NCBI GenBank assembly: GCA_051294905.1
Contig: CM119371.1
Coordinates: 18,414,001 to 18,478,000, forward strand
Direction: 5' to 3'
From: Botryllus schlosseri
Lineage: Eukaryota
DNA: 64,000 nt
Part shown: positions 778-40,649 of the stretch, one piece after another
How the letters are laid out: each line of letters starts with the position of its first letter
How positions within the stretch are numbered: position 1 is the first letter of the stretch
Notes under the pieces: generated by a model
Seen by the model: the letters and a program-made list of their open reading frames with translations, nothing else
Told to the model about the DNA's origin: nothing
The model's database searches: none
Position numbers and translations under genes: made by a program

Positions 778-989
778 CAGGGGTTCTCAACCCGCGGGCC
801 GCATGCGGCCCGCAGACGATTATTTTGCGGCCCGCGACATCTTTCAATAGGAACGGGATTACTACTGGCACATTATTGTTATGGAAGACCGATGTGTCAC
901 ATTTGTCGAAGTACAGTTGTTGCAACGAAGCGTAGAAACTTAAAATGACACCACGATAGTTTCTTCTGGAGTTGTACAATGTACAATGT

Positions 990-1620
990 ACATATTGCCT
1001 GATCTGAGAGAAACCGTTGCGAGCTAGGTTTCAAGCCCATCAATCCATATTTCGAGGCATTGTTAAAATTGCCGAATACGTTACAGACGCATTGTTCAAA
1101 ATTGCATGGAATATCGCTGAACCCAAGAATCTGTTAGAGGGTGTGACTTCAATAAAACTTTAACGTACTGTGCGAATATTCGCTGTTTCCGGAACTTTGC
1201 AGCACGTCCAACAACACCTGACAAATTTCGAAGCAAAAGTTGTCTGATTCAACATTCCCCAGAATAATAACAGCAAAGTCAGTCCATCTTTTATCGCATG
1301 TTCTGAAACACGTTGCCACGTATACTTTAGCCTAGCCTTGGACGAATCCACCGACTGCACACACGTGGCATAGCTAATCATCCAGCTGCGTTTTATCAGA
1401 CTGGACATATTTCCAGAGGAAATTCTGACGGGGCAAACGTGGGGAGGGGACCAGTGAAAAAACATCAACTTTACAAAGTTGGCTTCTGTAACTATTGGTG
1501 TAGGGCTCCAGCCATGGAAGGAAAGGAAAAGAGTTGATTGGTTTGCTCAGAAGTGATATTGGCCTCTGTAACGAAACAGTAGCCGTAATTTTATACTTGC
1601 TCGCTCACGCATTGAAACAG
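990..1620 (+). pseudogene. hAT transposase remnant
   Basis: Translates YFSLALDESTDCTHVA*LIIQLRFI from 1323 (first catalytic Asp motif of Charlie/SPIN transposases) and a downstream APAMEGKEK motif; stops and frameshifts present. Confidence 0.85.
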
Positions 1621-6857: not shown

Positions 6858-8295
6858 CGCTTCTCGTGTGCCAAATTTGGCCTGCGTGCCACAGGCTGGC
6901 CGCACCTGATCTGTATGGTTAATAATAACAGTGATTGGTGGTACATAAAAATTATATTGAAAATTCTTTGAAAGCAAATGTTTTCATGATAGAGAAGTTG
7001 GAGTCGGAGTCGGAGTCGAAATCATAGTCATTCTCACAAACTCCGACTCCGACTCCAGTCAGTATTTTCCCACCGACTCCGACTCCGACTCCGACTCCAG
7101 CTATTACAGTTTTCACGACTCCGACTCCGACTCCGACTCCATCAAGCGAAAATTACCCCGACTCCGACTCCGACTCCGAATCCACAACCCTGACTGGAAG
7201 TTAGATATTCTCACAAAAAAACAGTAACTGCAATGCTTGATAATGCATAAAAATGTACTAAATGCCCGTATAAGACTGGTAAATGGGCTATAGTGTCCTC
7301 TAAATTGAACAGTAGCCCAAAAATACACGGTGATAATGTTCTGCGGCCCGCGGCCTCTTCCGCTGTTAAAATGCGGCCCGTTATACGAGGGAAGTTGAGA
7401 ACCCCTGGTATAGAGGATGAACTAGTATTTCTTTGGTAGTAATTGCTTGTATTTCGACTTTAATGTGGACATGCTCGTCGACTGGGAACGCTTGGGAATG
7501 TTATGAAAACATATTTAAAAATAAGTATTTTGCGATGATCATGGGTAGAAAGTATTTACCACTGTCCATTTCATAGTAATTTACGTGATAGATACATCAT
7601 TTTGCCTAGCTACAATATGACCACCCCGGCCAGTTTTTCGAGCTTAACAGTAATAGTTGACTTGGAAGATGCTATCGGGAACGAAATAGGGACAGTAATA
7701 GACGGAAGCAGGTTATTATGCAATTTAAGACACGTGCATTCAGTCATTCAGCCACACTAAACAATTTTCAGACTCACACAGCATCATATATTTGAAGAAA
7801 ATATCCCATCAACTTCAATTGAGGTGATCATGGACGAAGCAATGTAATTCTATCCTAGAAGAAACGAAGTTTACAAATTTATTTACATTTTTCCTTGCAG
7901 TTCAGTGCCGAATCAAATGATTGGGAAGGCCACTACGAGTTCAGAGAATTATGAATGTAAGTAAAACACCAATTAAGGTAGTAATTGTTACTTGGTTGAA
8001 ATCAACTACTTCTAGGGCAGTTTCATAAATATAAGAAATCCAGAGCTTTTGGAGCACTATTTGTGTGCTATGCATACAGAGTAGGAGCTAAAAACAAGAC
8101 CACATAGTCGGTCAAGCCGTTGTTCTTCCTTACATGATACACACATGCCAATATTTGAACTGATTTAGGGTTTTCATCTTACAAAGTGTCCATCCGTAAG
8201 CCTGAATTTACTGAATAGTTTCAGATGCTTAAATCAAAAGTGCTTGGAGCAGTAGCACCAACGGTCAAGAACTACCAGCAAATTTATTTGAGTAT

Positions 8296-8976
8296 TTGAA
8301 GAATACAATTAACAAGGCCAGTAGTGGAAGTCAGTTGATGCAGATGTTCAGCTGTGATGGTATAACACTTCCAGAACATTTCCCAAATCTGCGAAGAATA
8401 TTTCTTCTCCAAAGTGTACGAAGGGTGTTCGACATAGCGTCATCGATATTTCAAAAAAGAAAATCCGGTAAGAAGGAAGTGGAGTGTGAGCTGACCGAGG
8501 ATGAAAAGTATATAATACAGTATATTGCCGGGTATATAGGCCTACTACAGAAGATGAAAAAACGTTGCCGAGATGCAGACGAGTTTGACTTGATATGTCA
8601 ATTGATTGACTCCGAGCCCAATAACAACGTGTCGCCGAATTCATTAATATCCGTACTCCAGAAGAAGGATTTTGGCCAGTTGACAGTACCTGTCCAGGGA
8701 CTACTAAATGCACTGATGGTCATTGAGACAAAATTTAGATCAGGTTATCAACACCATAATATTATTGAAAATTTAATGCAGGATATAGATCTGACAACAT
8801 TCACCATAGCAATTCAAAACTCCATAACAAATCAGTTACTGGAAAAAATCTTCCGTTACTACATCAGAATTCGTTGCTACCAGAAAGCAAGAGTTATAAA
8901 CTCAGAACTTCAAAATAACAAGGACCAAAACATTAGTCAACGCAAGGCACTGAAGTCTATTTGTAACAAAAAGTGA
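8296..8976 (+). pseudogene. C-terminal domain resembling P-element/THAP9-type transposases (remnant)
   Basis: IIQYIAGY...LISVLQKKDFGQLTVP...IETKF...YYIRIRCYQKAR pattern recalls P/THAP9 C-termini; the upstream frame is broken by stops; AG/GT-bounded exon-like block at 7901-7956. Confidence 0.5.
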
Positions 8977-9309
8977 TTTGTACTAATGCGGATAAATTTT
9001 CCTCTTCAATTAATGAGAACTCTCCTATCATTATTAAATGAAGGACTACGCCTCGTAACGTGAATGCAGTGGATCAATCTTCTTTTCCAGTCTCCGTAAA
9101 CCATTCTATTATGATTTGACGAATAACTGTGCCATTTTGCTTATATGCAGTTGTTCCATTTCCGCAAACTGATCTATTAGGATTTCCCGAATAACTGTGC
9201 TATTTTTATTATTAAATGCAATGGATCAATTTCCGTAAACTGTTTTAAATAGTATTATTAGGATTCAAGATTTGCTTCCAAAACTACATTCATTGCAGTG
9301 AAAAACTGT

Positions 9310-9720
9310 GGCACCGATTCCGAAAATATAAATTAAAATACTGATCAGGCACTGATCCACCTAGAATCTGTCCTCTAAGTCCGAAATATCGGCATTGTTT
9401 AGAACAATCGGGTAACCGCAACACAATGACCATAACAATGACCCGTTGCCACTCTCCGACTGTTCGAACAATACCGATATTTCAGACTTGGAGGGTGGAT
9501 TCTAGGTGGATCAGTGCCTGATAATTATTTCACTTTATATTTTCGGATTCAGTGCAACAGTAGCTTTCGATCAAGACCAGATTCAATAATTTCTGCGCTC
9601 GGGAAGATAGCTTTTAGATTGCCAGAAATCCTACAGTCGCTTACGCAAAACAATTCTCCACTCCAGCCCCGGCGAAGCGGAACGAAGCTGCAAAATCGGT
9701 CGTTGCCGTTCCATGTTTAA
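9310..9720. mobile_element. Left-truncated copy of the ~590-bp palindromic MITE family
   Basis: Homologous to 10743-11331 and 11339-11920 with the centre in the opposite orientation; ends ...GTTCCATGTTTAA. Confidence 0.8.
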
Positions 9721-10735
9721 GTACAGATAACTAACCTACGGATAGATACCCAACACCCGTCGTCACGCTTGCTTGCTCGGAGGAAAATACCGCTCAGCAA
9801 TCTGAACGCAACGTAATTGCCAAACCCATAGCTGACGACCCGAGCGCTCAAATTGAATAAAGTTGATCTTATTTGAACGCTACTGTCGCACTGATTCCGA
9901 AAATATACATTAAAATCCGATTGGGGCAATAGAACCACCTCTAAATACACCTCAAAGTCTGAAAATTGGCATTGTTCGGAACAATCGAAGACACGCAAGG
10001 GTCATCATTGTTATGGTCATTGTGGTGCGTCGATGTGATTGTCTGGAACAATGCCGATTTTCAGACTTTGAACGCTATTTCGGGCTGGCTCTTTTGCCTT
10101 GATGAAAGTTTAATGTATATTTTCGGAATCAGTGCGACAGTAGCTTTCTAATAAGATCAACTATATTTAATTTGAGCGCTCGGGTCGTCAGCTATGGGAT
10201 TGGCAATTACGTTGCGTTCAGATTGCTGAGCGGTATTTTCCTCCGAGCAAGCAAGCGTGACGACGGGTGTTGGGTATCTATCAGAGATGAGCGGATTTGA
10301 AATTTCGATGTCCTAATCCAATCCAAATCCGAACCTTCCAATCCAAATCCAAATCCTTATCCATAACTTTTTCATATTCAAGTCCATGTCCAATCCTAAT
10401 CCGATTCCAACTGGAAATTCGGAAAAATACTAATTTATGCAATGGAGGGATTCGAAAATTTTCTTTCACAATCAACGATTCACTTGATTCAAGATAACTT
10501 AGTAACCATAAGTACATTAATAACTGATCTGAATAAAGTTTGTCGCCATTCGCCACACGACATTTCAATCTCCCAGAAAATCGGTAAATCCAATCCAAAT
10601 CCTAATCTGTTCTGAAAAAAATGTCTAATCCAAATCCAATCCAAATCCGACAAAATTTCACAAATCCTGTTTTTTCAAAACCTAATCCTAATCCATGCTC
10701 ATCTCTGGTATCTATCCGTAGGTTAGTTATCTATA
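9721..10735. mobile_element. Related palindromic MITE subfamily (termini TA(T/C)AGATAACTAACC), interrupted by a hAT MITE
   Basis: Long inverted arms (AGATAACTAACCTACGGATAGATACCCAACACCCGTCGTCACGCTTGC... and its reverse complement at 10200-10281 plus 10708-10735); inner sequence shared with the neighbouring MITEs. Confidence 0.8.
10282..10707. mobile_element. hAT-type MITE with AATCC-rich subterminal repeats
   Basis: TIR CAGAGATGAGC / GCTCATCTCTG; perfect 8-bp TSD GTATCTAT at 10274-10281 and 10708-10715. Confidence 0.9.
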
Positions 10736-10742
10736 GTACAAT

Positions 10743-11331
10743 TATAGAAATTAAACATGGAACGGCAACGACCGATTTTGCAGCTTTGTTCCGCTTCGCA
10801 GAGGCTGGAGAAGAGAATTGTTTTGCGTAGGCGACTTTAGGATTTCTGGCAATCCAAAAGCTATCTTCCCGAGCACGGAAATTATTGAATATGGTCTTGA
10901 TCGAAAGCCACTGCTGCACCGATTCCGAAAATATAAAGTAAAATAATAATCAGGCACTGATCCACCTAGAATCCGCCCTCCAAGTCGAAATATCGGCATT
11001 GTTCGAACAATCGGGGAGTCGCAACGGGTCATTGTTATGGTAATTGTGTTGCGGTTACCCGATTGTTCTGAACAATGCCGATATTTCAGACTTGGAGGAA
11101 AGATTCTAGGTGGATCAGTGCCTGATCATTATTTAAATTTATATTTTCGGAATCAGTGCAACAGTAGCTTTCGATCAAGACCAGATTAAATAATTTCTGC
11201 GCTCGGGAAGCTAGCTTTTGGATTGCCAGAAATCCTACAGTCACTTACGCAAAACAATTCTCCTCTCCAGCCTCCGCGAAGCGGAACGAAGCTGCAAAAT
11301 CGTCGTTGCCGTTCCATGTTTAATTTCTATA
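10743..11331. mobile_element. Palindromic MITE copy A (P-superfamily-like, 7-bp TSD)
   Basis: Termini TATAGAAATTAAACATGGAAC / GTTCCATGTTTAATTTCTATA; flanked by GTACAAT at 10736-10742 and 11332-11338. Confidence 0.88.
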
Positions 11332-11338
11332 GTACAAT

Positions 11339-11920
11339 TATAGAAATTAAACATGGAACGGCAACGACCGATTTTGCAGCTTCGTTCCGCTTCGCCGAGG
11401 CTGGAGTGTTTTGCGTAAGCGACTGTAGGATTTCTGACAATCTAAAAGCTATCTTCCCCAGCGCAGAAATTATTGAATCTGGTCTTGATCGAAAGCTACT
11501 GTTGAACCGATTCCGAAAATATAAATTAAAATAATGATCAGGCACTGATCCACTTAGAATCCACCCTCCTATCTGAAATATCGGCATTGTTCGAACAATC
11601 GGAGAGTCGCAACGGGTCATTGTTATGGCCATTGTGTTGCGGTTACGCGATTGTTCTGAACAATGCCAATATTTCAGACTTGGAGGACAGATTCTAGGTG
11701 GATCAGTGCCTGATCGATATTTTAATTTAGATTTTCGGAATCGGTGCAACAGTAGCTTTCGATCAAGACCAGATTCAGTAATTTCCGCGCTCGAGAAGAT
11801 AGCTTTCTGGTTGCCAGAAATCCTACAGTCGCTTACGCAAAACAATTCTCCACTCCAGCCTCAGCGGAGCGGAACGAAGCTGCAAAATCGGTCGTTGCCG
11901 TTCCATATTCAATTTCTATA
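11339..11920. mobile_element. Palindromic MITE copy B
   Basis: Same termini as copy A; flanked by GTACAAT at 11332-11338 and 11921-11927. Confidence 0.88.
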
Positions 11921-11927
11921 GTACAAT

Positions 11928-14279
11928 CATAGTGTCCTATATGGTGTCGACACAAGCAAATCGCACGGTTCAATGAAATTGTATCACGTCACAGTTTCCA
12001 CTTGGCTACAGGCAATTTGACGGTGATTTTTGACCGACTTGCCGAGCATTAAATTTGATGAATGGGTATCAATCGAAAGCTGACGCTGTACTGCTTGCGA
12101 AAATATAAATTTTATTCCACTCATGGCCCTCGAACCCCCACAATCTGCCCCAAATTATTCATTGTCGAGTAGATTGGCAGTGTGACGCAACAATGATGTC
12201 TGGCGCAACGAGAGACTAGCTCAAGAGCAAGGATGCGGCCGAGCGGCGAGAGTGGGATCAGCTGACGCCGCGGCAATAGCAATGTGCAGCCGCGCCACAG
12301 AGAAACGCTGCGCTGTTGATACATTTTCTATGCGTTTCGGTACAAGCGAGCACACACCAGCCTTTCCTTGACTTGTAAGGTTAGAACTGGGTCCACGGAA
12401 TGTATTAGGGTCCTACCAATTTTCGCGCAATATCCTTCAGCTGATAGAGATATGTAGGCTACGCCTAAGTAGTCTACATTGGATATGTCAGATTATTATG
12501 ATATCGATTGCCTTAGCCCGCTTGTTGCGTAGGACTCCAGAGATGCGTGGCGCTGTTGATACTTTTTCTATGCGCTTCGCTAAAAGCGAGCACACACCAG
12601 CCTTTCCTTGACTTGTAAGGGTAGAACTGGGTCCACAGAATGTATTTGGTCCCTACCAATTTTCGCGCAATCCTTCAGCTGTTAGAGATATTTCTAGTAA
12701 GGAAATATACTTTCAAGTAATAAGATTCACTCAAGACAGCAAATTTAGATAATGTAAAAATATCATATTGTAGTAATACAACTACAGTGTTGAGTTTTCA
12801 CTCTAGTCCCCATAAGCACCACGTCGGTGACCTTGCCAAATTCCGAGAAGGCGAAAAAGTGCAAACTCTGTTGGGCCGAATGGACAATTGACATTCAGTT
12901 ATTCACAGATGCAAAAAAAAAACTGCAAATCCGTTTTACGTAAGTTACATTAGGAATATATATACAGGCTACAGAATGAAAGTAATTCAAATATCTGTGA
13001 TAGCACTGTATTACTTTTGACGCAAAAGGTCCCCGGCATTCAAAAAAACTGTTTGGTGATTGAAAAATGCTAAACCAAATTCTAACGTCAACGTTTATAG
13101 TGATATCAGATATATTCCAGTGAAAAACAGAGGTATGAATTTGATGGTAACATTTTGGAATCATTTGGCAGGTATGGCCCGCAAGCTTTCTAGTAACGGA
13201 TTGAATCCGGACAGCGATACCAGTTTAATTCGACACTCCATCTGTTAAACTTTATTCAACAATCAACATTTTACCTGCTGCATTCGCGGACCAAGTCCTA
13301 CCCATACAGATCAAATAAAAGCTTAATTGTAATGTATGCTCATGCTCAATGCTCCTTGCTCACACTTAACCATAAAAGCGACTATAGAAAGTATCTACAC
13401 CCGCCATCAACAGCGCGACGTGTCTCTGGAGCCCTACGCAACAAGCGGGCTAAGGCAATCGATATCATAATAATCTGACATATCCAATGTAGACTACTTA
13501 GACGTAGCCTACATATCTCTATCAGCTGACGGATATTGCGCGAAAATTGGTAGGGCCCTAATACATTCTGTGGACCCAGTTCTACCCTTACAAGTCAAGG
13601 AAAGGCTGGTGTGTGCTCGCTTTTAGCGAAGCGCATAGAAAAGGTATCAACAGCGCCACGCATCTCTGGAGCCCTACCCAACAAGCGGGCTAAGGCAATC
13701 GATATCATAATAATCTGACATATCCAATGTAGACTACTTAGACGTAGCCTACATATTTCTATCAGCTGAAGGATATTGCGCGAAAATTGGTAGGGCCCTA
13801 ATACATTCTGTGGACCCAGTTCTACCCTTACAAGTCATGGAAAGGCCGGTGTGTGCTCGCTTGTACCGAAACGCATAGAAAAAGTATCAACAGCGCAGCG
13901 TTTCTCTGTGGCGCGGTTGCACATTGCTATTGCCGCGACGTCAGCTGATCCCACTCTCGCCGCTCGGCCGCATCCTTGCTCTTGAGCTAGTCTCTCGTTT
14001 TGCCAGAGAGCATTGTTGGGTCACACTGCCAATCTACTCTACAATGAATAATTTGGGGCTGATTGTGGGGGTTCCGGGGCCGCGAGCGGAATAAAATTTA
14101 TATTTTCGTAATCAGTGCAGAGTCAGCTTTCGATTGATACCCGATTCATCAAATTTAATGCTCGGCAAGCCGGTCAAAAATCACCGTCAAATTGCCTGTA
14201 GCCAAATGGAAACTGTGACGTGATACAATTTCATTGAACCGTGCGATTTGCTTGTGTCGACACCATATAGGACACTATG
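11928..14279. mobile_element. Foldback DNA transposon with ~0.8-kb TIRs containing ~240-bp tandem repeats (Galileo/P-superfamily-like)
   Basis: Termini CATAGTGTCCTATATGGTGTCGACAC / GTGTCGACACCATATAGGACACTATG; 7-bp TSD GTACAAT at 11921-11927 and 14280-14286; ~240-bp units at 12313-12692 and inverted at about 13410-13895. Confidence 0.85.
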
Positions 14280-15998
14280 GTACAATCGTACATCTCGAAA
14301 GCTCACTTCGGGGACTTTCCCCTCGAGAAAACGAGCGCAAGCATCGACGCCCTGTTTTTTACATTCGACGTGGCTTGTATCGTAGACTGTGCGAAATTTT
14401 CTCTGATGTCAGTCAATCAGATACAGATTTTAGATGAGGACTTACGATTCCTAGACTAGACAAGCATCGCTCATATCGTATTTTGCTTGATCGATTAGTT
14501 TTGCATTGCATATGGGTGATCGGGCAGCCGCCCTAAATTCACGTGGTGTGGTGTGGTGCGATATGCCAGTAAACATTCGGGCGCTTCTTCGATATACGCC
14601 CCAGATCGAAACAGTGTTTCACATGTCACCAGCAATTGTTTTTTATACACGTCAAAAGAAATAGTTTTTGCCTGTGGAGGGACGGATATTAGGGTGGATG
14701 TTGGTTAGGGTCCTATATGGAATCTCGGTTTATTTTTTGAAATAAATCCTGCGTGATGAGAGCTTTTTTGTATAAAATAATTGAAGCAAATAAACAGAAA
14801 ATCCTATGTGATGTTGCCACCGATTCCATTCCGGGTTAGGGTCAAAGTTGGGGTCAGGGTATCCCAAGGTTAGGTTTTGGGGAGGGGGTATTAATGTACG
14901 AGAAAAGGATATTAGGGTTGGGGTCAGGGGAGGTTATTCCAAGATTAGTGTTGGGGAAGGGGGATATAAGGGTTAGAGGTGGGTTAGGGTCAAAGTTGGG
15001 GTTAGGGTATCCCAAGATTAGGGTTAGAGGATATTATGGTCGGAAGAGTGTGGGATATTAGGGTGGAATATCGTGTCCCTCACCCTGAACCGAATCTTGT
15101 GATACCCTAATCCTAACCCTAACCCAGCTCTAACTCTAACGGGTAATTTCTTGCCAAATCAACAAGGGGGTTACACCAAGGTTGGAGAATTTATATGAAA
15201 TTTGGCACACTGGTTGATATTGCTTTAGATCTGTCAAATCCAATTTTTTTTTTAGAAAATTCTAAAAAAGTATCACGTTATGAGGCTTCGAAGTTTGAAC
15301 ATTTTCCTTGTCACGCTTCATTGAACATTGTAAATTATTTTTTTAATGTCGTAATTTTGAAGGTAAAAAGCCGTTGATGTGGATGAAATTTGGGGACATG
15401 ATACCACTGGTCCCCAGGAATTCTTAAATTGATGGCTCGAACATTTCAGAGAATGTTATCATGTAAAAAAATGTTGCATGAGACGCCTACTGCTCGTTTT
15501 GGTACCGAAAGTTCAAACTCCCATAAATAAAACTTAGGGGAAAAATTTAAGAAACCAAAATTCTGATGTAGTGATCTTGAATATATTGTCTTTCATTTAA
15601 TAATGATTCAATCCATTAATTTCCAACTACACCAGTAAAAAACTTCAAATGAATGATTGGATTATAATAACAATGGAGTTCAGACCTTTACGTCATTGTT
15701 CATTGTGATGTCACGATGCATCCAATGTTAAAGGTGGCTGAATGGAGTTAACTAGCCCTGGGAATTACAGTATAGTTGTGGCTGAGTAACTAGTCCAATT
15801 TTAGTGAGTGAGTAACTTTATTGTCTCAATTGCAGCAGGTAAATAACTTATTTTGAATGTCATAGTTAGAAAGGTGATGTCTCAGCCTGAAAATTGCAGT
15901 ATTGGAATAAATTTGCCACAAATTACATTTTAACGTGAATACCGGCTTGGTAAGTGTGCCGATAAGTGTGGTTATATGATAGGAAATGATGGATTGGA

Positions 15999-16110
15999 TT
16001 GGTGTTGGACGTAAATAAAGAGCAATATGATGCGACAATCAAATTCCTGCATCCTCACGATCCATCAGATTCATTTCATTGGCCAACAAGAGAAGATATA
16101 TCTATTATGT
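15999..16110 (+). pseudogene. Fragment resembling the C-terminus of an invertebrate DNA-transposon protein
   Basis: VLDVNKEQYDATIKFLHPHDPSDSFHWPTREDI matches the (F)LHPxGP...FxWP...D pattern seen at the ends of some transposon ORFs; family not assigned. Confidence 0.4.
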
Positions 16111-16439: not shown

Positions 16440-17310
16440 AATGCTCCATCTCTAGGGTTTTGAAAAAATCGGATATAGCTCCCAAATACGGACCAGAAAA
16501 ATGCCCGGCATTTTTACACCTGCCTTGGCTAGGTAACGTGTCCAACCGTTTTGAAAAACTCATTAAATCGGCTGTTCACCGTTGTTATTACAGCGTAAAC
16601 ACGCATATGGTGTACACAACAAAACCCCTGTTGCCGAACTCTCGAAAAGGTGTACTTCCTGCCTTTGAAGCAAGTAATGTTGTTCACCAATACCAGTGCC
16701 ACTGTGATAGTAGGTATGTAGGACGTACATCTCAAAGATTGTTTGAGCGTATTAAGCAGCATATCCCAAAATTGATTCGGTCAAAAACATGCGTAAATGA
16801 TCGCACGGAGCTTGCACGTTAGTGCAAATTGGCTGCCAAAACAGACTGCTATGACGATTACCAAGCATATGCTTCGTCAATTGGTCAGCATTTGAGTGAA
16901 AACCTTGCCTGTGCACAGCACTATGATGACAATATGTTCACTGTCATTGCGCGTGGTAGGTCTTTGTTTCATCTAAAAGTGCTTGAGTCTACTATTATTC
17001 AGTTGAACAAACCTATTATATGTAGACAAAAAGATTTACTCTATAACCTAAAAATTTCTCATTAGTGCGTGTTGTCCCGTGCGTGTAAATGTTTATTTAT
17101 GAATTGCATTGCTACTATAGTACCGTATGTCCGTATACTTCATAGATTGTTATTGTTGCCATTGGTACAATGCAAATTTCATTTTCTGTGATTTTGATTG
17201 TTGCGTCATACTTTGCCTTTTTGGTTTTGCTTTTAAATCTGTTTAAATCCCTTTAGTGTGCCGTTAACTCTTAAAAAGATGCTCCCGAAAAGTCTTCGAG
17301 TTCAATAAAT
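16440..17310 (+). mobile_element. 5'-truncated Penelope-like element (GIY-YIG endonuclease region plus 3' UTR)
   Basis: HLPWLG..., CHCDSRYVGRTSQRLFERIKQH, SSIGQHL, HLKVLESTIIQLNKPIICRQK; in-frame TAG at 16820-16822; AATAAA near 17304. Confidence 0.88.
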
Positions 17311-20674: not shown

Positions 20675-21679
20675 TTGAAGTGCAGATTCAAGAACAACAT
20701 GGCAATGTATGCTGATGTCAAAAGCGAATCTGATTGCGAAAACTACAAATGTGATGTGCATGGGGAAAAATTCACACGGAAGAGTGACCTGAAAAAATGC
20801 ATGGTTACGGATGCTGGTATCGACTGTCATAAATGTGATGTATGTGGGAAAGAATTTGCACGCAAATGTGGACTCGAGACACACATAGTCATGCATGCTA
20901 GTTTTAAAAACCATGAATGTGAGATTTGTGGCAAAGTATTCATTGTAAAATCTAGATTGAAGTTGCATCTTGAAGACGTTCATTTTGGTATAAAAAATCA
21001 CAAGTGTGATGTATGTGGGAAAAATTTCTCACGGAGGGGTTACTTCAAGCAGCACATGGCCATGCATGCTGGTCTTAGACGACATAAATGTGATGTTTGT
21101 GGAAAAGAATATATGGAAAAGAGTCATCTGAACTTACACATGAGCATTCACACCGGTGTAAAGAAGCATAGCTGTTTCGTTTGTGGGAAAAAATTCGCTG
21201 GAAAATCCGACTTGAACAGACATCTTTATAGGCATGCTGGTGTCAAAAACCATGAATGCGATATTTGTGGGAAAGCTTTCGATATGAAAGGTTCCTTGAA
21301 AAAGCATCTTGATATCCATTTTGGTGTCAGAAGTCACATATGTGTTCTGTGTGCCAAAGAATTCTCGTTTAAGGGTGACCTCAAAAGACACATGGATAGG
21401 CATATTGGTGTCAAGAACCATAAATGTGAGGTTTGTGGAAAAGAATTCATTCTGAAGGGTAACCAAAAGGTACACATGAATATACATTCTGGGGTCAGGA
21501 ATCACGAATGTAGAGTTTGTGGCAAAAAATTCACTTTGAAGGGTAACCTCAGGACACACATGTATATGCATTCCGGTGTCAAGAATCATAAATGTGCTGT
21601 TTGTGGGAAAGAATGTACTCTTTTTAAGGCTAATCTTGAGAAGCACATGAAAATTCATTATGGTCTCAAGAATCACTAA
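20675..21679 (+). CDS. C2H2 zinc-finger array (10 intact fingers plus degenerate flanking fingers); terminal exon of a ZNF gene or a young pseudogene
   Basis: Repeated HxCxxCGKxFxxKxxLxxHxxxH units with (A/F/T/S/I)GVKNH-type linkers; candidate splice acceptor TTTTTGCAG near 20243, but upstream frames contain stops; an out-of-frame degenerate finger follows the stop. Confidence 0.85.
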   Translation: MKCRFKNNMAMYADVKSESDCENYKCDVHGEKFTRKSDLKKCMVTDAGIDCHKCDVCGKEFARKCGLETHIVMHASFKNHECEICGKVFIVKSRLKLHLEDVHFGIKNHKCDVCGKNFSRRGYFKQHMAMHAGLRRHKCDVCGKEYMEKSHLNLHMSIHTGVKKHSCFVCGKKFAGKSDLNRHLYRHAGVKNHECDICGKAFDMKGSLKKHLDIHFGVRSHICVLCAKEFSFKGDLKRHMDRHIGVKNHKCEVCGKEFILKGNQKVHMNIHSGVRNHECRVCGKKFTLKGNLRTHMYMHSGVKNHKCAVCGKECTLFKANLEKHMKIHYGLKNH

Positions 21680-24812: not shown

Positions 24813-27183
24813 ATGACGACTACTGCTTCATGACATTATTGTTGAAAATGCTTTCAAACAGCACTAGCTGTTCGTCTTTGTTAACTTCGGTTCTGGTCTG
24901 TTTTCATTGCAGTCTTGTTTGGTTTATTACTACTTAGACAATCTTTAAATTCCTATGGCCAAATTATGGGGACGAGGACAAAAGAGATTCCGCAAAATCT
25001 CAAAATGACAAAGATTTTGGAGCATCGCGGCTGATCAAGATCCTGCATCATCGCTTCACATCAAATCAGTGTATACCGTATGCGGTATGTGTATGTGACG
25101 TCCTCGGCAAATTCGCTGGCAAATTTTTTGTCATAATGAATGCAGTCGCCGACTTCAGAGCCTGAACAATTGTTACTGCATAACAGCATGATGTTAATGG
25201 GACAGAATTTTCAACCGGACTTCAAAGATACAGTTACTGAAAACAATAGTTACAACGCCTGTTCCGTCTAAGAACTTGAACCTGGACGTAACCAAAATAC
25301 GATCCTACATGTGTTTTAGACCAGCTAACTACTGGTTTCACTGCGACAGCCGAGAAGATGATGAAAGCATTGGACATTTCGTACATTGAGTGCTGCACGA
25401 GGTAAGGTTCCAATGTGGACATTGAGATTATAAGGTTACAAGTATTTTCGTGAGAGATTAGAACCAGATAGTAGTCATAAACACATTTAATTTTCAAGTC
25501 CTTTTTTCCAACCCAAATCGATATATTATTTACAGCACAAGTGCGTGCAATTCGTGTTTGTCACATTATGACAGGGTTCGCCGACTCGAAATGGATCGCG
25601 GGCCACTTTCAAATTTTGTAGAGACGGGCCGCAAGAACGTAATATAGAGACGAAATAGGCCACACCGTTTAGCAAACGCGTTTTTAAAACCTCACGCCAG
25701 TACAACGCTGTGTTCTCTAACGTGGGAGACAGGCATAGTTACCCCAAAAGAAGTATGTATTATTTTACTAAAAAATACAAATACATCGAACAATATCATC
25801 ATCGTCAATGTCATTTTATTCTGAACTATGAGCAGCGCACTATACCTGACAACACTTTTCAGCAATTGAGGAATCGATATTGGGGCTAGCGAGACACTGT
25901 ACTTGCTGAATGACTATCTCCTCTTGAAGCTTGATTTTGTGGGGCAGTCCCACACCGTTTCCAAGCATCTTGGTCTTGCAAGTAACTGGGACATTGCACC
26001 TCAATGCAATATGGACATTAGCCTGGCATTCATATTGGCTGATTCTCCATCGAGGAATGCTGTTGCCATAACCGAAGCCGGTTTAGCTAGTGAGGAATAG
26101 TGATTCGGGGCAAAGAAGACCAACTTATTTTGAAAAAGCAATAGGCTACCTATATTTTGAAACTGAAATTAATTTCAGCGTTTCACAATGCTTCATTTAC
26201 CGTTTTTCCTAAATCCAAATTCAGATCGCGGGCCGTGTCTTGGTCACCCCTGCACCGGTGATTTACTGATTATAGACTACTAACTGGCCAAGAGGCCGGT
26301 TGAATCATCCAATGTTAGTGCATCACAAGAGAGGGTCAACTCAAATGTGAAAATCCAGATTGCAAGGTCAGCAACATTTTTGTAGATGAGAACCTGGTCA
26401 TAGTCGATGCATTCTGTTTGTTTAAATGTCTTTGAAATCTACGAACGCTTGCAGCTCTCATTGGAAATGGGAGACACATCGAATTGCCTTATATATTAAT
26501 TGACTGTGTCAATGACCAACCTTGAATTCGGCCTGTTTATAGCGTGGGTCCACGTCCAACAAAAGAAATTCAATATGATCGTACGGAATATCTAAGGCAG
26601 GGGTGAGCAATTATTTTTCCAAAGCGGCCAAATAGGAGGCAGAAAATAGCTTGGCGGTCGAGTCGAAAGTTTAAACTACGGTATATTCTGCAATGCATCG
26701 AATTTATTTTAAAATTGAATGGAGTGAATTGCATTATTAACTCAAGCTGATGATTGGATGTGTTGATATGAGTAATGAAGAATTAGCGTTTAATTGACAA
26801 AAAATAATAGTACTCCTGACTCCTGCGCTATTATTTAAAAAAAGGTAAACATGAAACATTTTTACCGTACCTCAATTTTTAGTGGGGCGGTTTAGCCCAA
26901 ATATTCAAAAGGATTGTGCATTTTGTGATACAAGCACCAAATTTGGCACACATGTATATTAACATGTTGCGAACATTTTCAGATATTGAGCCACTCGGAA
27001 TTCTCTCTTTATGTCCGCCTTATTGGATTTCAAAATGGCCGCCATTTGAAATCTACATTTGCGATTATCTCTGAGCCTAATGCTGCTATTGACTTTATTT
27101 TGGTATCTAAATGTATGTTTTTTGGGTCAAGGAATCCAATGGTATCAATCTGCAATGCGTATTTTTACCAATGAGCCGCCATA

Positions 27184-29370
27184 TTGAATTTGAAAATGGC
27201 GGCTTCACATTACATGTATGTGCGTTCTCTAAGGCAGAGATCGTTGACGATGTACCTCGATGCTCTGACAGAGCTAGTCACCTGGTTCCACGCACTAGAT
27301 CATACTCAGTATGCTAGGTGGATACCAGTGCACCTGAAGGACGTGGCCGAACTCACTACCAAACACCCAGACGTAGTCAGGAAATTCAGTGAAGGCCATT
27401 TCACAGTTCAGAAAACACAGAGGGTGTTCTCTTCAATCCCGATTGACCAGGCACATGAGAAAAATAATGCCTGCATTGAAGGAGACGGTGGCGCAGTTGG
27501 GCTCACTAACAACTCTGGGGCCCTTCGTCGCTGGATGGTTGCGGGACCAGAAGTTGCTAGGGTGATAGAAGAATTCCAGGACGGGAACCAATACTGGAGA
27601 CGGGAAACAGCAGACACACGTCATCACGATCAGACGCCAAGTGTACAGGCCTCATTTGTGAAAGATATTCGCTCTCTCGTCGGTGTCATAGAGGAGATGG
27701 GCAACCCATTCGAGGAGGAGAGTCAGGATCTAGTCGTACTGGACACAAAGGACATCGCAGGTCCTGCTGCTGTGGATACCGTGATGAATGCCAAGAGGAT
27801 TGGCCAAGAGCAGTTCGAGGCTTTCACCAGAGAGTGTCTGTTGGACAGAACAAAGGCAGCGGACGACCCCATTCCTCGTAACAAGCTGAAAGTGTTCAAC
27901 ACTTCAACTCCAAGAAACCAGAGCAAAGGTCAGCAACAGCTCACCTCTGTCAAGAATGACCGTGAACTTTTCGCACGCCTGTACATTAGCTGCCAGACGA
28001 GGGATGGAAACCTTGAGGAGTTTTTTCGTCACGAGAACCAGGCATGTCCTCCTGCACTGTCTGCTGGTGGAAACCTCTTCACTGGTACCAAGAATGATCT
28101 CATCACATGCTTGGAAGAAGTCTCCGACCCCAGGACAGAGACTCCTGTCACTACCTGTATAGTGCTTGATGGAGCGGCCATAGTCCAGATGCTGAGGCCG
28201 GCTGCATTAAAGACCTTTGAAGAGTATGCACATCAGATCTTCATCCGATATATGTCTACGAAGCTGCAAACAGTGTCACGCCTGGATCTGGTCTGGGATA
28301 CTTACCTTGCTGATTCGCGGAAAGGTATTACACGTGCAAAGCGGGGACAAGGCGTGCGGAGTCGTGTGGTGGCCGCCGCATCCATACCAGGAAACTGGCA
28401 AAATTTCCTACGAGTGGACAGCAACAAGACCGAGCCGTTCAAGTTCCTGTCAGCAGCTCTCATGGAATGGTTTGAACAGGAGGACAAGCAACTGGTCATT
28501 ACTGATGGAGAGTCAGTACTCAGCACGCCACTACTACCAGATCTGACCTCACTCGCCCCATGCAACCATGAAGAGGCTGACAGTCGGATGTTGCTGCATG
28601 CATCTCATGCAGCCAAGCATGGACACCACTCAATAGTCATCCGGACTGTAGACACCGATGTTGTGGTACTGGCAGTGTCCGTGGTACAGGAGTTGCAACC
28701 AGAAGAAGAACTGTGGCTGGCATTCAGAACAGGCCAAAGATTCCGATACCTAGCAGCACACGAAATTGCAGCTGGACTGGCACCAGAATAGGCTCGTGCA
28801 CTGCCAATGTTCCACGCTCTAACTGGATGCGACACTGTGTCTAGTTTTGCCAGACATGGCCAGAAGACTGCGCGGGCAGTCTGGACGGTACTGCCAGAAC
28901 TCACTGAGGCGCTGCTGCTGCTGTCCTCCGCACCACATGGCATACCAAATGATGCAATGTGCATCATCGAGAGGTTTGTGATCTTGTTGTATGATCGAAC
29001 CAGCAAATGCACGGACATTGACACGGCCAGGAGGTAACTCCTTGCAAGGAAGAACGATGCGCAGCTTATCCCTCCAACGAAGGCAGCTTTAGAGGAACAT
29101 GTCAAGAATGCAGTGTATCAAGGTGGATATGTGTGGGGTGAGATATTGCTGCCAGCACCTGAGCTCCCTCCACCAACCAACTGGGGTTGGTCAATGACTG
29201 GAGGACAGTACACACCATACTGGACCAGGCTACCTGAGGCAGCTCACAGCTGCATTGAGCTGATTTCTTGCAAGAGCCAGAGGGGGTGTGAAGCGCTGCA
29301 AATGCAAGAAGGCTGGCCTTCAGTGCACAGTCCTCTGTGTGTATGACGGGGACTGCACAAGACGATGAGT
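27184..29370 (+). pseudogene. Academ transposase C-terminal half plus XPG/FEN1-like nuclease and Cys-rich tail
   Basis: DHTQYARW, FSSIPIDQAHE, GGAVGLT...ALRRW; CNHEEADSRMLLHA, IRTVDTDVVVL, FHALTGCDTVSSF (XPG H2TH); after a frameshift, RCKCKKAGLQCTVLC; in-frame stops at 28789-28791 and 29035-29037. Confidence 0.88.
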
Positions 29371-29719
29371 CCACAACATACATGTACTTGTGGAAGTGCT
29401 GAACTTGTTAACATGACACTGTTTATGTACGCGTATCCTCAGTGCCGATATATAGGCTACCTAGCCTCAGATACCTATCATACCAGACCATTGTAGAATG
29501 TCAGTATACACCTAGCCTCAGAATTTAGACCATGTAGCATGTCAGAATTGTACCTAAGACATTTACAGACATAAGACTTTTACACCCATTTAACATGCTT
29601 GCATAAAATCATTCTTTTCAAAGTATCGTGTTCAATCAAATATTTCCTAGATAAGTTGTAATTACAATTATACAACAGACTATGAAAGATAACATTAAGT
29701 TGGAATTCGTACCATTGGA

Positions 29720-29900
29720 TTGTGCATTGGATTAGGTTTGTGCATTGCATTTGATTTAGATTTGCATATTAGAATTTTTGATTTGTGCATTTGATTTAGA
29801 TTTGTGCATTATAATCATAGATTTGTGCGTTAAAATTTTAGATTTGTGCATTTGATTTAGATTAGTGCATTAGAACTGTGCATTGGTTTGAGCATTGGAT
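29720..29900 (+). repeat. Short tandem repeat (TTTAGATTTGTGCATTTGA-like) just inside the Academ right TIR
   Basis: About 8 degenerate copies. Confidence 0.8.
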
Positions 29901-31510
29901 TGTGAAATTGGTACCATTGGATTCCTTGACCCAAAAAACATACATTTTGACACCAAAATGACGTCAATAGTAGCATTTGACCCAGACATAATCGCAAATG
30001 TAGATTTCAAATGGCGGCCATTTTGAAATCCAATATGGCGGACATAAAGAGAGAATTCCGAGTGGCTCAATATTTGAAAATGTTCGGAACATGTTAATAT
30101 GCATGTGTGCCAAATTTGGTGCTTGTATCACAAAATGCACAATAGGTTTGCTATGCTGCCCCACTATTTATTCACATCAACCGCCAGACATTTTTTCTAT
30201 TAAGACACCAAAATTTATTTGGAATATTACAAAGCTGGTTATTACAGTCGCTGCATCATGGGCAGTGTATAGCTCGGTAGAGTAACCTTGTTGTTTTGCT
30301 AGCTTCGCTAGCTGGTCATAATCTCATCGCTGGCCGTGAAATGGCGTGGTAAGTTTTCAAGTCTATGGCAAATATTTTTTGAAAAGGTCGCCAGATATAA
30401 ATAACGCTGTGAACCCGTGGGTATCTCATGATAGGTTTTCCAGTACCGTTAGCTAAAAGGCCCATGCTATCATTAGGAATTGATGACGATAAATACTTAG
30501 CGAAAAAATTCTGGATTTACCTCGTACAAATAAAGCGAATACCGGGCAGCAAAAGAAATTAAGGCCACTACACACGCATAGTGAGCATATGTTAATGTTT
30601 AGGATTTTTCCGACGTCCTGGCATTTGTCTTCTCTTCGCTAAAGCATACCAGACCAAGCTGTTTTAGAAGCTTTGTTCATGGGGTTCAAAATTGCTACTA
30701 GGGCTATTCAAAAACAACTTCTTTTTCATATTATACTGACTTATTCATAAAATTGTCAAGTTGCCAAAATTTAGGATTTCCAATCATAATACTTCTGGTG
30801 GGTATGGATCTATAATAAATAACTGAAGAACCTGCCACCATGAATAGGCTACTATTTTTTTCAAATCCAAATTTTTTACTCCTATAACTCTGTTTCTACT
30901 CGTTGGAATTGAGGCAAAATTTGTTGTCCATCGTATTTTCGGACAACCTGACTACTTTTTGGGGTGACCAGTAAAATTTAAATAAAAATTCAATAAATCC
31001 AAAACTTTTTTCTTATATAGTAATGCTTCTATAGGTTGAAATTGAGCCATGAATGGTGTGCAGTGTTTTTAGGCAACTTAACAATTTTATCAAGTAGGCC
31101 TAACCAGAAAAATTTTGGAAAATTGTGCACCTAATGTGCACTCTTGTCGTCAATTCCTATTCAATTACAAGTAGAAATAGCAATTTTCAAATTAACTCCG
31201 AGGTAGAAGTCGAATACGAAAGATCTCATAGTACTCGAGTAATTAATAAAGTAAATTGAGAAGAGGCGTCACACACTTTGATTAGTCAATCGGTGGTGAC
31301 TTATCTTTCAAAATTGTGAGGAAGATGTTCGTGACGCACAGAATGACTATTGCTGCCATGAATTCATGGTTAAATTACCAGCCTAAACGCAGGGTTTTAT
31401 TACAACATCATTGATGGAAGTGGCGTAAATCTATGCAGCCAGAACTACGGTCAGATTTATTCAATCTGTATCTAACGGCTGATGGTTCATATTATGGCTT
31501 GTTGTCGCGG

Positions 31511-31606: not shown

Positions 31607-31763
31607 GTCAGTTGTGAATACCAGTAGTCAATGTCCGATATGTTATAATGTGACAGGGTCTAACCAAGTCACGAGGTTCCGAGTCACAAGTCAATCTCAC
31701 TTTTATAGTTTTGACTCGAGTCATTTTCAATTCACCTCCCAGTCAAGTCCGAGTCCAAGTGTA

Positions 31764-31789
31764 CTCGGCCTTTATGGCTAAGATCAAGT
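31764..31789 (+). ncRNA. U2: U2 snRNA 5' fragment (nt 8-32) forming the head of the retrotransposon; not a U2 gene
   Basis: CTCGGCCTTTATGGCTAAGATCAAGT vs U2 CTCGGCCTTTTGGCTAAGATCAAGT (one extra loop A; insect U2 has CCTTATGG). Confidence 0.85.
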
Positions 31790-32815
31790 TTCGCCGACTC
31801 CTACGTTCGACCACCGAAGACGCTGCCCACGCCGGACCACTCAACTCGACCAGAAGATTCTTCGACCGCCTCCGTCTCAGCAGCCGCTTGCCGCGCCTCT
31901 GCCGTGGGTCATCTGAACACCATCTCCTGCTACAACGTTGGAATCTCCGGAAAGGTTAGTTATTCCGGAGCTACAATTCCAACGCCGGCCAGAGATTCCT
32001 TGTTGCTCAACTAAGGCGTAGCCGTCTACGCTGCAACAAGGGATAAGCAACGAAGAAGCCTATCAATTCCGTTGCTTTTGCCACGGTACGGTGTGATTTG
32101 AACACGTCGTTCAACCTCCGGAGTGATCTTGGATCGCTTGCCTTAACTGTTCGACTATAGCAGAAAGGCTGCCGTGTGCAACTCTGGTCGAGGCCCTAGA
32201 CGTCGGGATTCCTCGCCACCTCGCTGCAAAGCATCTTCAAAGCAGCGAGACGAACTGCTACGCCGTCCAAAACAACATCATAAGAAGCGGAATATCAAGA
32301 ACATCAAGATCGCTTCGTAAGGACGGCGTAAGATCGACGGCGAATCGTTTGGACATAACATCAGTATCAACAGAGAGCCGTCGATCTGCAAAGGCGAGGA
32401 AAACCCGGGTGTTAACGCGCATTCGTAAGGTAAATTTCGTTTTTACCGTTCGCGTTAACATACGTGTAGGGCGTAGCAGTAGTGCTGCTGACGCGGGGGT
32501 AATTAAGTCCGGCGTGGGTACACAATTACGTCTGGCCTGTATCCTAACGCGTTCGCTATTCCTTTACGAACCCTTGGTTAACCTTTGTATTGTCCCTTTA
32601 ATTGTCTGTTACTATTCGTTTAATTTATCGCCTTTCCTATCCCCTCTAATAGCGAACGCTGGTGCAGGCCGCTTAGTCTTTGCTTCCAGTTATTGTCCCA
32701 ATTCTCATTTCGTTACGTTTAATTGTGTGCGTGATTTGATCTTACTTGTATTTATATTCGTTGTAATAGGTCGCGACTCGGTCACCTTTAGGCCTTTAGT
32801 CCGCAAATTTCTTCG

Positions 32816-39344: not shown

Positions 39345-39856
39345 TAGGGCTTGGCAAAATGGAGTACCTGAATGATGCGATTCATAATCACGTATTACGC
39401 TTAGGGTCGAGTATTCGAGTATCACTCATTATGACGTCACAACAGAATGTAATATGTCGAAGTTCAAATATGTGCCTTTTATGCCACCACAAATAACATA
39501 ATGCCTGTTGTCCGTCACATTGAAGATACTTTGATATTTTTTCGACCATACCGATTTCATTGCACTTACTGACAATGTTGTGGGATAATCATGACTTCCG
39601 AAATGTGTTATTCCCAGTAACGTTCGTAGCTAGGTGTACTGTGTCTCATATGCTGCGACACGGCCAATCAAGGTTTCAAGGCTTCAACAGTGAAAATTGG
39701 TATCAAAACTATAATTCTCGTTAGTAAATTAAGTTTCAGTTGTGAGGAGCGTATAATTTCAGTACTCGAAAAAAATCGTCTCACACTGCTTGACTCGAAT
39801 CATTAAAATTAATACTCAATTCAGATTCGAGTATTCGAATCATTGTGCCCAACCTA
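39345..39856. mobile_element. MITE, inverted relative of 24303-24812
   Basis: Termini TAGGGCTTGGCAAAAT / TGTGCCCAACCTA; internal sequence is the reverse complement of the 24.3-kb copy. Confidence 0.8.
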
Positions 39857-40091
39857 AGTTCTGGCTGATGAGGGACAAACATGATATTGGGATTATACAT
39901 AGAGCAATATTTTGTCCAAAATAATTAAGTGCAATGGTAACATGTCTCATTTATATAATTTAGCGATTGAGTGTTTCTTCCCTTCTGTTATCGCACTTGT
40001 GCTTAGCTCAAACGTGCTCGACCATGGACTAAATTAAAAGCCAATGGCCCGACCAAACGTCATCAAACTTGGTAGTTCTTCACGTGATAAA

Positions 40092-40649
40092 CAGGGTTGT
40101 AATGACTCGACTCAAGTCGCGATTTTTTGGTGACTCGACTTGACTGGAGTCATTTTTTCAAATGTGTCAAATGACTCGACTCGGGTAAATTTTAGTATTG
40201 ATCAACTTGTACTCGAGTCATTATACTGTGCATGACTCGAGACTAGGACGGCCAAGACATTTCATTGTAACTTTGAAGAATAGTAAAGTTACCGGTAGGC
40301 GGTAGCACAATATTGGTATTTCGTCTATCAGTCCTGATACTTGGAAAATACGACCAGAAACTGGTAAGACTGAGGAAAATTACTATGTTATGAATGCCAG
40401 CCACTCCAGCAGAGTTGGAAAAAGTGGGTTGAACTGGATTGAAATCAAAACTGAACACTGATGAACAATATGACTTGAAATCGGACTCTAGTCAAACACC
40501 ATATGACCCGGACTGCACCCTCAACTAGCTCACTTGGACTTGGACTTGACTCGGTGGTGAATTGAAAATGACTCGACTTGACTCGAGTCAAAACTATAAA
40601 AGTGAGATTCACTTGTGACTCGGAACCTTATGACTTGGTTACAACCCTG
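40092..40649 (-). mobile_element. GACTCGAGTC-rich hAT MITE
   Basis: TIR CAGGGTTGTAA / TTACAACCCTG; TSD degraded (GTGATAAA / CGGACAAA). Confidence 0.85.

What the first reader, a model, noticed from the sequence alone, without database searches (positions are those of the whole stretch)
9310..14286. At least four different TIR elements stacked end-to-end at one 7-bp target (GTACAAT)
Seen: exact GTACAAT at 10736, 11332, 11921 and 14280, each sitting between the terminus of one element and the start of the next (MITE subfamily 2 | MITE A | MITE B | foldback element). The junction at about 9720 looks like a fifth, partly deleted copy. All elements have (T/C)ATAG...CTAT(A/G) termini. Established: 7-bp TSDs and CA-type termini typify the P superfamily (Galileo, 1360), and tandem insertions separated by one TSD are known for Drosophila P elements. 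Inference: one transposase repeatedly re-targeted the TSD regenerated next to a resident element end, building a multi-family array. This suggests an end-guided or strongly sequence-specific targeting system and a possible satellite seed.
Basis: partly seen in the sequence, partly recalled or inferred. Interest (0 to 1): 0.75.

Follow-up and report, generated by a model that had tools for sequence, protein, structure and literature searches.

The report
Five transposons stacked at one target site
Five non-coding jumping-gene copies from three related families landed one after another in the same 7-base target, which was re-created between every pair; this is an extreme but explicable case of the "double insertion" already known for P elements in flies.

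Summary
[quoted passage not shown] The motif CTATR-N7-YATAG occurs nowhere else in the window (3 found, 0.28 expected).

The array is: a truncated palindromic MITE (9305-9720), a degraded junction keeping only GTACA, MITE X (to 10735, carrying a nested hAT-type MITE with an 8-bp TSD), MITE A, MITE B, and a 2.35-kb foldback element.

GTACAAT is a target-site duplication, not part of the termini. It is non-palindromic and direct on both sides of each element. Contigs of other foldback copies diverge 2 nt into it.

The elements are three related families, not four. They share a conserved block about 150-190 nt from each end.

A and B show no sister relationship, and the truncated copy is inverted. 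Independent insertions are therefore favoured over local duplication.

The 7-bp TSD, the GT…AC flanks and the Galileo-like foldback fit the P superfamily. No transposase could be tied to these elements.

The best reading is serial insertion into a regenerated preferred target, a mechanism known from Drosophila P-element dimers. Resident-end guidance is not shown. Genome-wide statistics could not be obtained.

Unchecked scan notes report similar CATAG / 7-bp-TSD foldbacks elsewhere in this genome.

The parts
9305..9720 (-). Truncated palindromic MITE of the A/B family ('P'). The left arm is cut at about 9290-9305. The right end lacks its last 8 nt (TTTCTATA). It is inverted relative to A and B.
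   Evidence: 92% identity to A and B on the minus strand against 85-87% on the plus strand; arm-specific indels show that its right arm is of the A/B left-arm type.
9721..9725 (+). Degraded junction. GTACA is the remnant of the shared 7-bp TSD, with small deletions on both sides. Alternative reading: only G remains and X starts at 9722 as TAcAG.
   Evidence: sequence; loose ends before 9725, whose consensus ends ...TAT, show that other X copies carry TATAG there.
9722..10735 (.). MITE X (subfamily 2). It is a 580-bp palindromic element once the nested insertion is removed. Termini are TA(c)AGATAACTAACC... and ...GGTTAGTTATCTATA.
   Evidence: arms 9741-10282 self-complementary at 86%; 9725-9750 matches 10707-10732 at 100%; alignment.
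10282..10707 (.). Nested hAT-type MITE (CAGAGATGAGC...GCTCATCTCTG) inside the right arm of X, with the 8-bp TSD GTATCTAT at 10274-10281 and 10708-10715.
   Evidence: sequence; loose ends of 106 and 57 contigs fall exactly at 10282 and 10707.
10736..10742 (+). GTACAAT, shared TSD between X and A.
10743..11331 (+). MITE A. 589 bp, palindromic over its full length (88.5%), termini TATAGAAATTAAACATGG.
11332..11338 (+). GTACAAT, shared TSD between A and B.
11339..11920 (+). MITE B. 582 bp, same orientation as A, 91% identical to A, with an 8-bp deletion relative to A and P.
11921..11927 (+). GTACAAT, shared TSD between B and the foldback element.
11928..14279 (.). Non-coding foldback element of 2352 bp. 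Arms 11928-12691 and 13513-14279 are 95% complementary. Each arm holds 240-bp tandem repeats (12298-12691; 13406-13896). The centre is 821 bp. Termini are CATAGTGTCC...GGACACTATG.
   Evidence: no long ORF and no transposase similarity.
14280..14286 (+). GTACAAT, outer right TSD, followed by low-copy flank CGTACATCTCG...
   Evidence: the bin 14348-14538 has depth 7.6 in X1.
11140..11173 (-). One of nine copies of the conserved subterminal block CGAAAGCT-N5-TG-N-AC-N-GATT-N-CGAAAATATA. It lies about 150-190 nt from each element end in all three families. The other copies are at 9536, 9874, 10116, 10902, 11490, 11728, 12074 and 14099. It is a candidate transposase-binding site.
   Evidence: 9 matches, 0 expected, all inside the array; alignment.

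Best explanation
A single genomic 7-bp site, GTACAAT, was hit at least four or five separate times. The elements are non-autonomous cut-and-paste transposons from three related families: two kinds of ~590-bp palindromic MITE and a 2.35-kb foldback.

Each integration makes a 7-bp staggered cut and duplicates the target. The site therefore survives on both sides of the newcomer and can be used again. The result is a chain of elements, each pair separated by exactly one copy of the TSD.

The families most likely belong to the P superfamily, of the Galileo/1360 type. That type makes 7-bp TSDs and prefers a loosely palindromic GT...AC target. They are probably served by the same or closely related transposases that recognise the shared subterminal block.

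Shown: the anatomy, the TSD nature of the 7-mer, the relatedness of the families, the inverted orientation of one copy, and the lack of A-B sisterhood.

Inferred: the order of events, the superfamily, the shared transposase, and that the site (or the resident ends) is strongly preferred.
For: - Exact direct GTACAAT flanks A, B and the foldback, and lies to the right of X.
- The junction motif occurs only here.
- Neighbouring elements have different terminal ~120 nt, so they cannot be copies of one another.
- The truncated copy is inverted relative to A and B.
- Three-way site patterns give 19 private to A, 11 private to B, and 11 private to P (which would include any changes shared by A and B). 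There is no excess of shared A/B changes.
- All elements are high-copy in runs of the same organism.
- 93 and 33 contigs of foldback paralogues diverge just behind 14281, after CTATG+GT, with flank agreement of only 0.36. The 7-mer is therefore not part of the element, and flanks tend to start GT.
- Flanks to the left of X-family copies have a consensus ending ...GAC before TATAG.
- Galileo makes 7-bp TSDs with consensus GTAGTAC / GTANTAC / GTATTAC inside a 15-bp palindromic motif. It has long TIRs with ~210-bp internal tandem repeats (PMC4168063, PMC2775673, PMC3573991).
- P-element tandem dimers separated by one 8-bp TSD arise by double insertion at strong target sites. Small deletions at such junctions are common (PMC5932611). 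This matches the degraded junction at 9721.
Against: - No solo copies with flanks could be retrieved, so TSD length and consensus rest on this locus plus the loose-end summary.
- GTACAAT matches the Drosophila Galileo consensus at only 4 of 6 specified positions.
- No transposase is encoded in or matched to these elements.
- A 5-fold stack is far more than simple motif preference predicts unless the site is exceptionally hot.
- The leftmost junction is lost, so the original empty site is unknown.
- An old A/B duplication cannot be strictly excluded.
Confidence: 0.7

Rival explanations
1. Resident-end-guided targeting. The transposase bound to, or recognising, the end of an element already in place directs the next integration into the 7 bp beside that end. 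Stacks of unlike families would then form far more often than the target motif alone allows.
For: - Five elements in one register is hard to reach by motif preference alone (inference).
- The element end plus the TSD reads ATA|GT. That equals the ANAGT half-site reported for the P and 1360 target motifs (quoted in PMC4168063). A resident end may therefore rebuild a good half-target.
- All families carry the same subterminal block.
- One contig in another individual joins an X-type right end to a foldback-type left terminus, apparently with a different spacer (joint 10735>11934). This is weak: only 23 nt lie on the shorter side.
Against: - There is no frequency data. Published P-element dimers are explained by strong sites without any need for end guidance.
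- The motif coincidence uses a Drosophila consensus.
- The joint is short and ambiguous.
Confidence: 0.2
2. Only some members are insertions. A and B (and perhaps the truncated copy) arose on the spot by unequal exchange or slippage between the flanking TSD copies, giving a nascent tandem repeat of 596 bp.
For: - A and B have the same orientation, are 91% identical, and are separated by exactly one TSD.
- Dimers can expand by unequal exchange (PMC5932611).
Against: - A and B are no closer to each other (91%) than either is to the inverted copy beyond X (92%).
- There is no excess of A=B-only sites (11, against 19 and 11).
- The inverted copy and the two other families cannot come from tandem duplication.
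Confidence: 0.2
3. GTACAAT is part of the element ends or an obligatory recognition sequence, so the 'shared TSD' would be trivial.
For: All junctions show the same 7-mer. The same 7-mer also occurs as a short tandem at 974-993.
Against: - The 7-mer is not palindromic, yet it is direct on both sides. A terminal repeat would appear as ATTGTAC on one side.
- Three families with unlike termini share it only here.
- Flanks of paralogous foldback copies lose agreement after GT (0.36).
Confidence: 0.03
4. Assembly artefact: repeats were joined wrongly.
For: The region consists entirely of high-copy repeats. No listed contig spans it.
Against: Mis-joins do not produce exact 7-bp direct repeats at every boundary between complete element termini. 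The nested hAT MITE has a clean 8-bp TSD.
Confidence: 0.03

Closest known systems
P-element tandem dimers formed by double insertion (McGurk & Barbash 2018, PMC5932611). From my own knowledge: the two inverted P elements at one 8-bp site in the Drosophila singed-weak allele.
   Same: Complete elements are separated by exactly one TSD-length spacer identical to the outer TSD. The logic is the same: insertion preserves the target and makes a second copy. Small deletions occur at some junctions.
   Different: There are five members instead of two. Three different families are mixed, in both orientations. The TSD is 7 bp, not 8. The host is probably a tunicate. The copies are old (85-95% identity) rather than recent.
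Galileo (and its Kepler and Newton subfamilies), the foldback-like P-superfamily transposons of Drosophila.
   Same: 7-bp TSD. Flanks tend to GT...AC (Galileo consensus GTANTAC). Arms are several hundred bp long with ~210-240-bp internal tandem repeats. Two-TIR non-autonomous copies are abundant. Other elements are often found at Galileo termini (14.7% of D. willistoni copies; PMC4168063).
   Different: No sequence similarity was tested or found. The termini are YATAG. No transposase is linked. The MITE members are palindromic over their full length.
Tetris, and MITE- or hAT-derived tandem arrays that seed satellites (PMC4079207).
   Same: A direct A-TSD-B dimer with a 596-bp period could serve as a substrate for unequal exchange.
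   Different: Only two direct units are present. There is no sign of expansion.

Membership tests
P superfamily (Galileo/1360 type) | 7-bp (or 8-bp) target-site duplication | tested here: met
   Exact 7-bp direct repeats flank A, B and the foldback.
P superfamily (Galileo/1360 type) | Palindromic target preference (Galileo GTANTAC within a 15-bp motif) | tested here: inconclusive
   GTACAAT matches 4 of 6 specified positions. The loose-end summaries suggest that flanks start GT and end AC. No set of independent TSDs could be collected.
P superfamily (Galileo/1360 type) | Transposase with THAP, split RNase H and GTP-binding insertion domains, encoded by an autonomous copy that has the same termini | not testable with these tools
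   No such ORF exists in the elements or the window. The genome itself cannot be searched. A P-transposon-associated ORF lies 330 bp to the left, but it has no link to these termini.
Galileo-like foldback structure | Long TIRs with internal tandem repeats | tested here: met
   Arms of 764 bp at 95%, with 240-bp tandem repeats in both arms.
TE tandem formed by double or multiple insertion | Each junction holds exactly one copy of the TSD between intact termini | tested here: met
   This holds at 10736, 11332 and 11921. The fourth junction, at 9721, is degraded.
TE tandem formed by double or multiple insertion | Members are independent insertions, not local duplicates | tested here: inconclusive
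   Met for X, the foldback and the inverted copy, which differ in family or orientation. For A against B, the three-way site patterns give no sister signal, but no family consensus was available.
MITE | Short, non-coding, with terminal inverted repeats and a TSD, and present in high copy number | tested here: met
   580-589 bp with only spurious ORFs. Very high summed contig depth in four runs.
hAT superfamily (nested element only) | 8-bp TSD and CAG-type termini | tested here: met
   TSD GTATCTAT with termini CAGAGATGAGC. The ends are confirmed by loose ends at 10282 and 10707. The transposase was not tested.
Dada superfamily (6-7-bp TSD; considered) | Insertion into multicopy small-RNA genes | tested here: not met
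   No Rfam family matches in 8000-16000.

The most novel reading that the evidence does not exclude
The transposase of this tunicate P/Galileo-like group preferentially integrates into the 7 bp next to an element end that is already in place. The reason would be that the YATAG terminus plus a GT-starting TSD rebuilds its palindromic target, or that the transposase is tethered at the conserved subterminal block. Heterologous TSD-linked arrays would then be a regular product and a route to new satellites.
Probability: 0.2. Interest if true: 0.65.

Novelty: new member of a known kind. Interest (0 to 1): 0.4.

Why it matters
The locus shows, outside insects, that P/Galileo-type elements can re-use a regenerated target several times and can mix families while doing so. 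That is the first step proposed for turning transposons into tandem repeats. If such stacks prove frequent genome-wide, the system would offer a natural test of how strongly target choice depends on sequence and how much on resident transposon ends. As a single locus, it is a clear but unsurprising illustration of a published mechanism.

Tried and rejected
- Metagenome scan with a 16-nt terminus. It returned 120 loci, and none contains the MITE.
- Protein-database search with the ORF spanning the A|B junction. It found no relatives, so copies could not be fetched by that route.
- Exact look-ups of window ORFs. None is on record.
- Scans of prokaryote genome contigs and viral contigs with the 28-nt conserved block. 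Both returned 0.
- Long ENA contigs fetched through P-transposase relatives (L123, L124). They hold no copy of these families and come from another organism.
- A 14-nt TATAGAAATATTT inverted repeat around the L124 transposase. It has no TSD and was rejected as chance.
- An inner CATAG...CTATG pair in X (9827-10196). It has inverted, not direct, flanks. It is part of the palindrome, not a nested element.
- The 38082-40387 YATAG pair. It lies inside longer arms that end at 37947 and 40526 with other termini, so it does not belong to this group.
- Findings search by sequence. It returned nothing.
Full report
**Observation**

Reading 9000-14700 and searching for the motif confirm exact GTACAAT at 10736, 11332, 11921 and 14280. 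At each place the 7-mer follows a CTATA or CTATG element end. At the first three it precedes a TATAG or CATAG element start.

The bare 7-mer is not enriched in the window (15 found, 10.1 expected). The composite CTATR-N7-YATAG occurs only at these three internal junctions (0.28 expected, no shuffle reaches 3).

**Anatomy** (self-BLAST; TIR/TSD scan; repeats)

| Coordinates | Feature |
|---|---|
| 9305-9720 | Truncated palindromic MITE, 'P' |
| 9721-9725 | GTACA remnant |
| 9722-10735 | MITE X, 580 bp without its nested insert |
| 10282-10707 | Nested hAT-type MITE inside X |
| 10743-11331 | MITE A, 589 bp, arms 88.5% complementary |
| 11339-11920 | MITE B, 582 bp, 91% identical to A, same orientation |
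| 11928-14279 | Foldback, 2352 bp |

- The nested MITE has CAGAGATGAGC termini and the 8-bp TSD GTATCTAT.
- The foldback has 764-bp arms that are 95% complementary. Each arm contains 240-bp tandem repeats. The centre is 821 bp with no coding capacity.
- None of these families occurs elsewhere in the 64-kb window.

**Is the 7-mer a TSD?**

It is non-palindromic and lies in direct orientation on both sides of A, B and the foldback. An extension of an inverted terminal repeat would read ATTGTAC on one side.

Contigs from four public runs, three of them labelled as one organism, were laid at 85% likeness or more. All the elements are highly repeated there.
- For the foldback family, 93 contigs in one run and 33 in another stop matching just behind 14281, that is after ...CTATG plus GT. 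Agreement among the flanks beyond that point is only 0.36.
- The same table places the hAT MITE ends exactly at 10282 and 10707, so these positions are precise.
- The remainder of GTACAAT is therefore not part of the element, and flanks tend to begin with GT.
- Flanks to the left of X-family copies have a consensus ending ...GAC before TATAG.
- Together this suggests a GT...AC target.

**Relatedness of the elements**

An alignment of all nine available arms shows unrelated terminal ~120 nt apart from YATAG. About 150-190 nt from every end lies a shared block, CGAAAGCT-N5-TG-N-AC-N-GATT-N-CGAAAATATA. It occurs nine times in the window, and all nine are inside the array (0 expected).

The stack therefore holds three related families, not four unrelated elements. 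The shared block is a candidate transposase-binding site. That last point is an inference.

**Independent insertions or local duplication?**

- X and the foldback differ in family from their neighbours.
- The truncated copy is inverted relative to A and B: 92% identity on the minus strand against 85-87% on the plus strand. Arm-specific indels near the centre agree.
- A three-way comparison gives 19 sites private to A, 11 private to B, and 11 private to the truncated copy. The last figure would include any changes shared by A and B.
- A and B are thus not sisters relative to a copy that lies two elements away in the opposite orientation.

This favours independent insertions of family members. 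It does not strictly exclude an old duplication, because no family consensus could be built.

**The degraded junction at 9721**

The expected sequence is ...GTTTAA TTTCTATA GTACAAT TATAGATAAC. The observed sequence is ...GTTTAA GTACA GATAAC. This fits two small deletions around the TSD remnant. Such junction deletions are reported as common in DNA-transposon dimers (PMC5932611).

**Comparison with known systems**

Galileo (P superfamily):
- It makes 7-bp TSDs with consensus GTAGTAC / GTANTAC / GTATTAC inside a 15-bp palindromic motif.
- 14.7% of D. willistoni copies have other elements at their termini (PMC4168063. See also PMC2775673).
- Its TIRs grow by ~210-bp internal tandem repeats (PMC3573991).

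P-element tandem dimers:
- They are separated by one 8-bp TSD and arise by double insertion.
- They form preferentially at sites close to the consensus.
- The authors state the logic explicitly: an insertion preserves its target while making a new one (PMC5932611).

The present array is that mechanism repeated four or five times with mixed families. GTACAAT matches the fly Galileo consensus at 4 of 6 specified positions.

**Superfamily assignment**

No transposase is present in the elements or anywhere in the window.

ORFs at 7629-7838 and 8296-8976 lie 330 bp to the left of the array.
- They are homologous to ORFs on a Logan contig, L121, at 54% and 83% amino-acid identity respectively (P0001 found).
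- On L121 those ORFs lie convergent to a genuine P-type transposase core (TNP-like RNaseH_N, GBD and RNaseH_C, plus a THAP ORF).
- The larger ORF is 35% identical to an ORF beside another P transposase on L124. That ORF has a sub-threshold Tnp_P_element_C match.

This shows that P-type transposon material lies next to the array. It does not link a transposase to these termini.

Unchecked scan notes report CATAG / 7-bp-TSD foldbacks elsewhere in this genome, one with a P-transposase remnant, and suggest a sea-squirt host. P transposons are published for Ciona (cited in PMC7776569).

No Rfam family lies in the region, which argues against a Dada-like RNA-gene target.

**Limits**

I could not obtain solo copies with their flanks. 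The following therefore remain untested:
- the TSD consensus;
- the genome-wide frequency of TSD-linked stacks;
- the choice between a hot site and resident-end guidance;
- empty or shorter alleles.

One contig in another individual joins an X-type end to a foldback-type start with what seems a different spacer (joint 10735>11934). Only 23 nt lie on its shorter side, so I treat it as a hint.

**Verdict**

The locus is real and cleanly structured. It is best explained by serial insertion into a regenerated preferred target by P/Galileo-like non-autonomous elements. It is an unusually deep, mixed-family example of a known process, of moderate interest.

Noticed in passing
window 974-993: GTACAAT GTACAAT GTACAT is a short tandem of the same 7-mer that serves as the TSD 9 kb away. 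The array's right flank also reads GTACAAT-C-GTACAT. This could be chance, a microsatellite, or an excision scar of the same transposon group.
   Followed up: partly
window 7629-8976 (+): Two ORFs (about 70 aa and 226 aa) are homologous to ORFs on Logan contig L121 (54% and 83% aa identity). On L121 these lie convergent to a P-type transposase core. The larger is 35% identical to a Tnp_P_element_C/THAP9_C-like ORF on L124. It is a P-transposon fragment, or a gene derived from one, directly to the left of the array. There is no transposase core in the window.
   Followed up: partly
L121:1224-3234 and L124:10001-12970: On contigs from two different samples, the P transposase core and the THAP9_C-like ORF lie in opposite (convergent) orientation. 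This may be a conserved rearranged gene layout in this P lineage.
   Followed up: no
window 26906-30150: An element is bounded by 244-nt inverted repeats (93%) and encloses a 535-aa ORF (27184-28791) with no Pfam match.
   Followed up: partly
window 37947-40526: Another foldback-type element has arms of about 400 nt and termini AGTAGAGGGTAGAG... It does not have YATAG termini. It lies next to the retrotransposon noted by an earlier finding at 31755-37960.
   Followed up: partly
window 52793-53902 and 59068-60177: Two 369-aa ORFs are present. The first has a reverse-transcriptase domain (RVT_1). They look like two copies of one retroelement.
   Followed up: partly
window 16460-16822: A 120-aa ORF has a motif that looks GIY-YIG-like (…YVGRTSQRLFERIKQH…). 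This is by eye only and may indicate a Penelope-like element.
   Followed up: no
window 20675-21679: A 334-aa ORF consists of tandem C2H2 zinc fingers (Pfam E 1e-43 to 1e-51).
   Followed up: partly
window 10735/11934 (run X17): A contig from another individual joins an X-type right end to a foldback-type left terminus. It skips exactly the span of A, B and their TSDs, apparently with a different spacer. It may be another stack elsewhere or a shorter allele. Only 23 nt lie on the shorter side.
   Followed up: no
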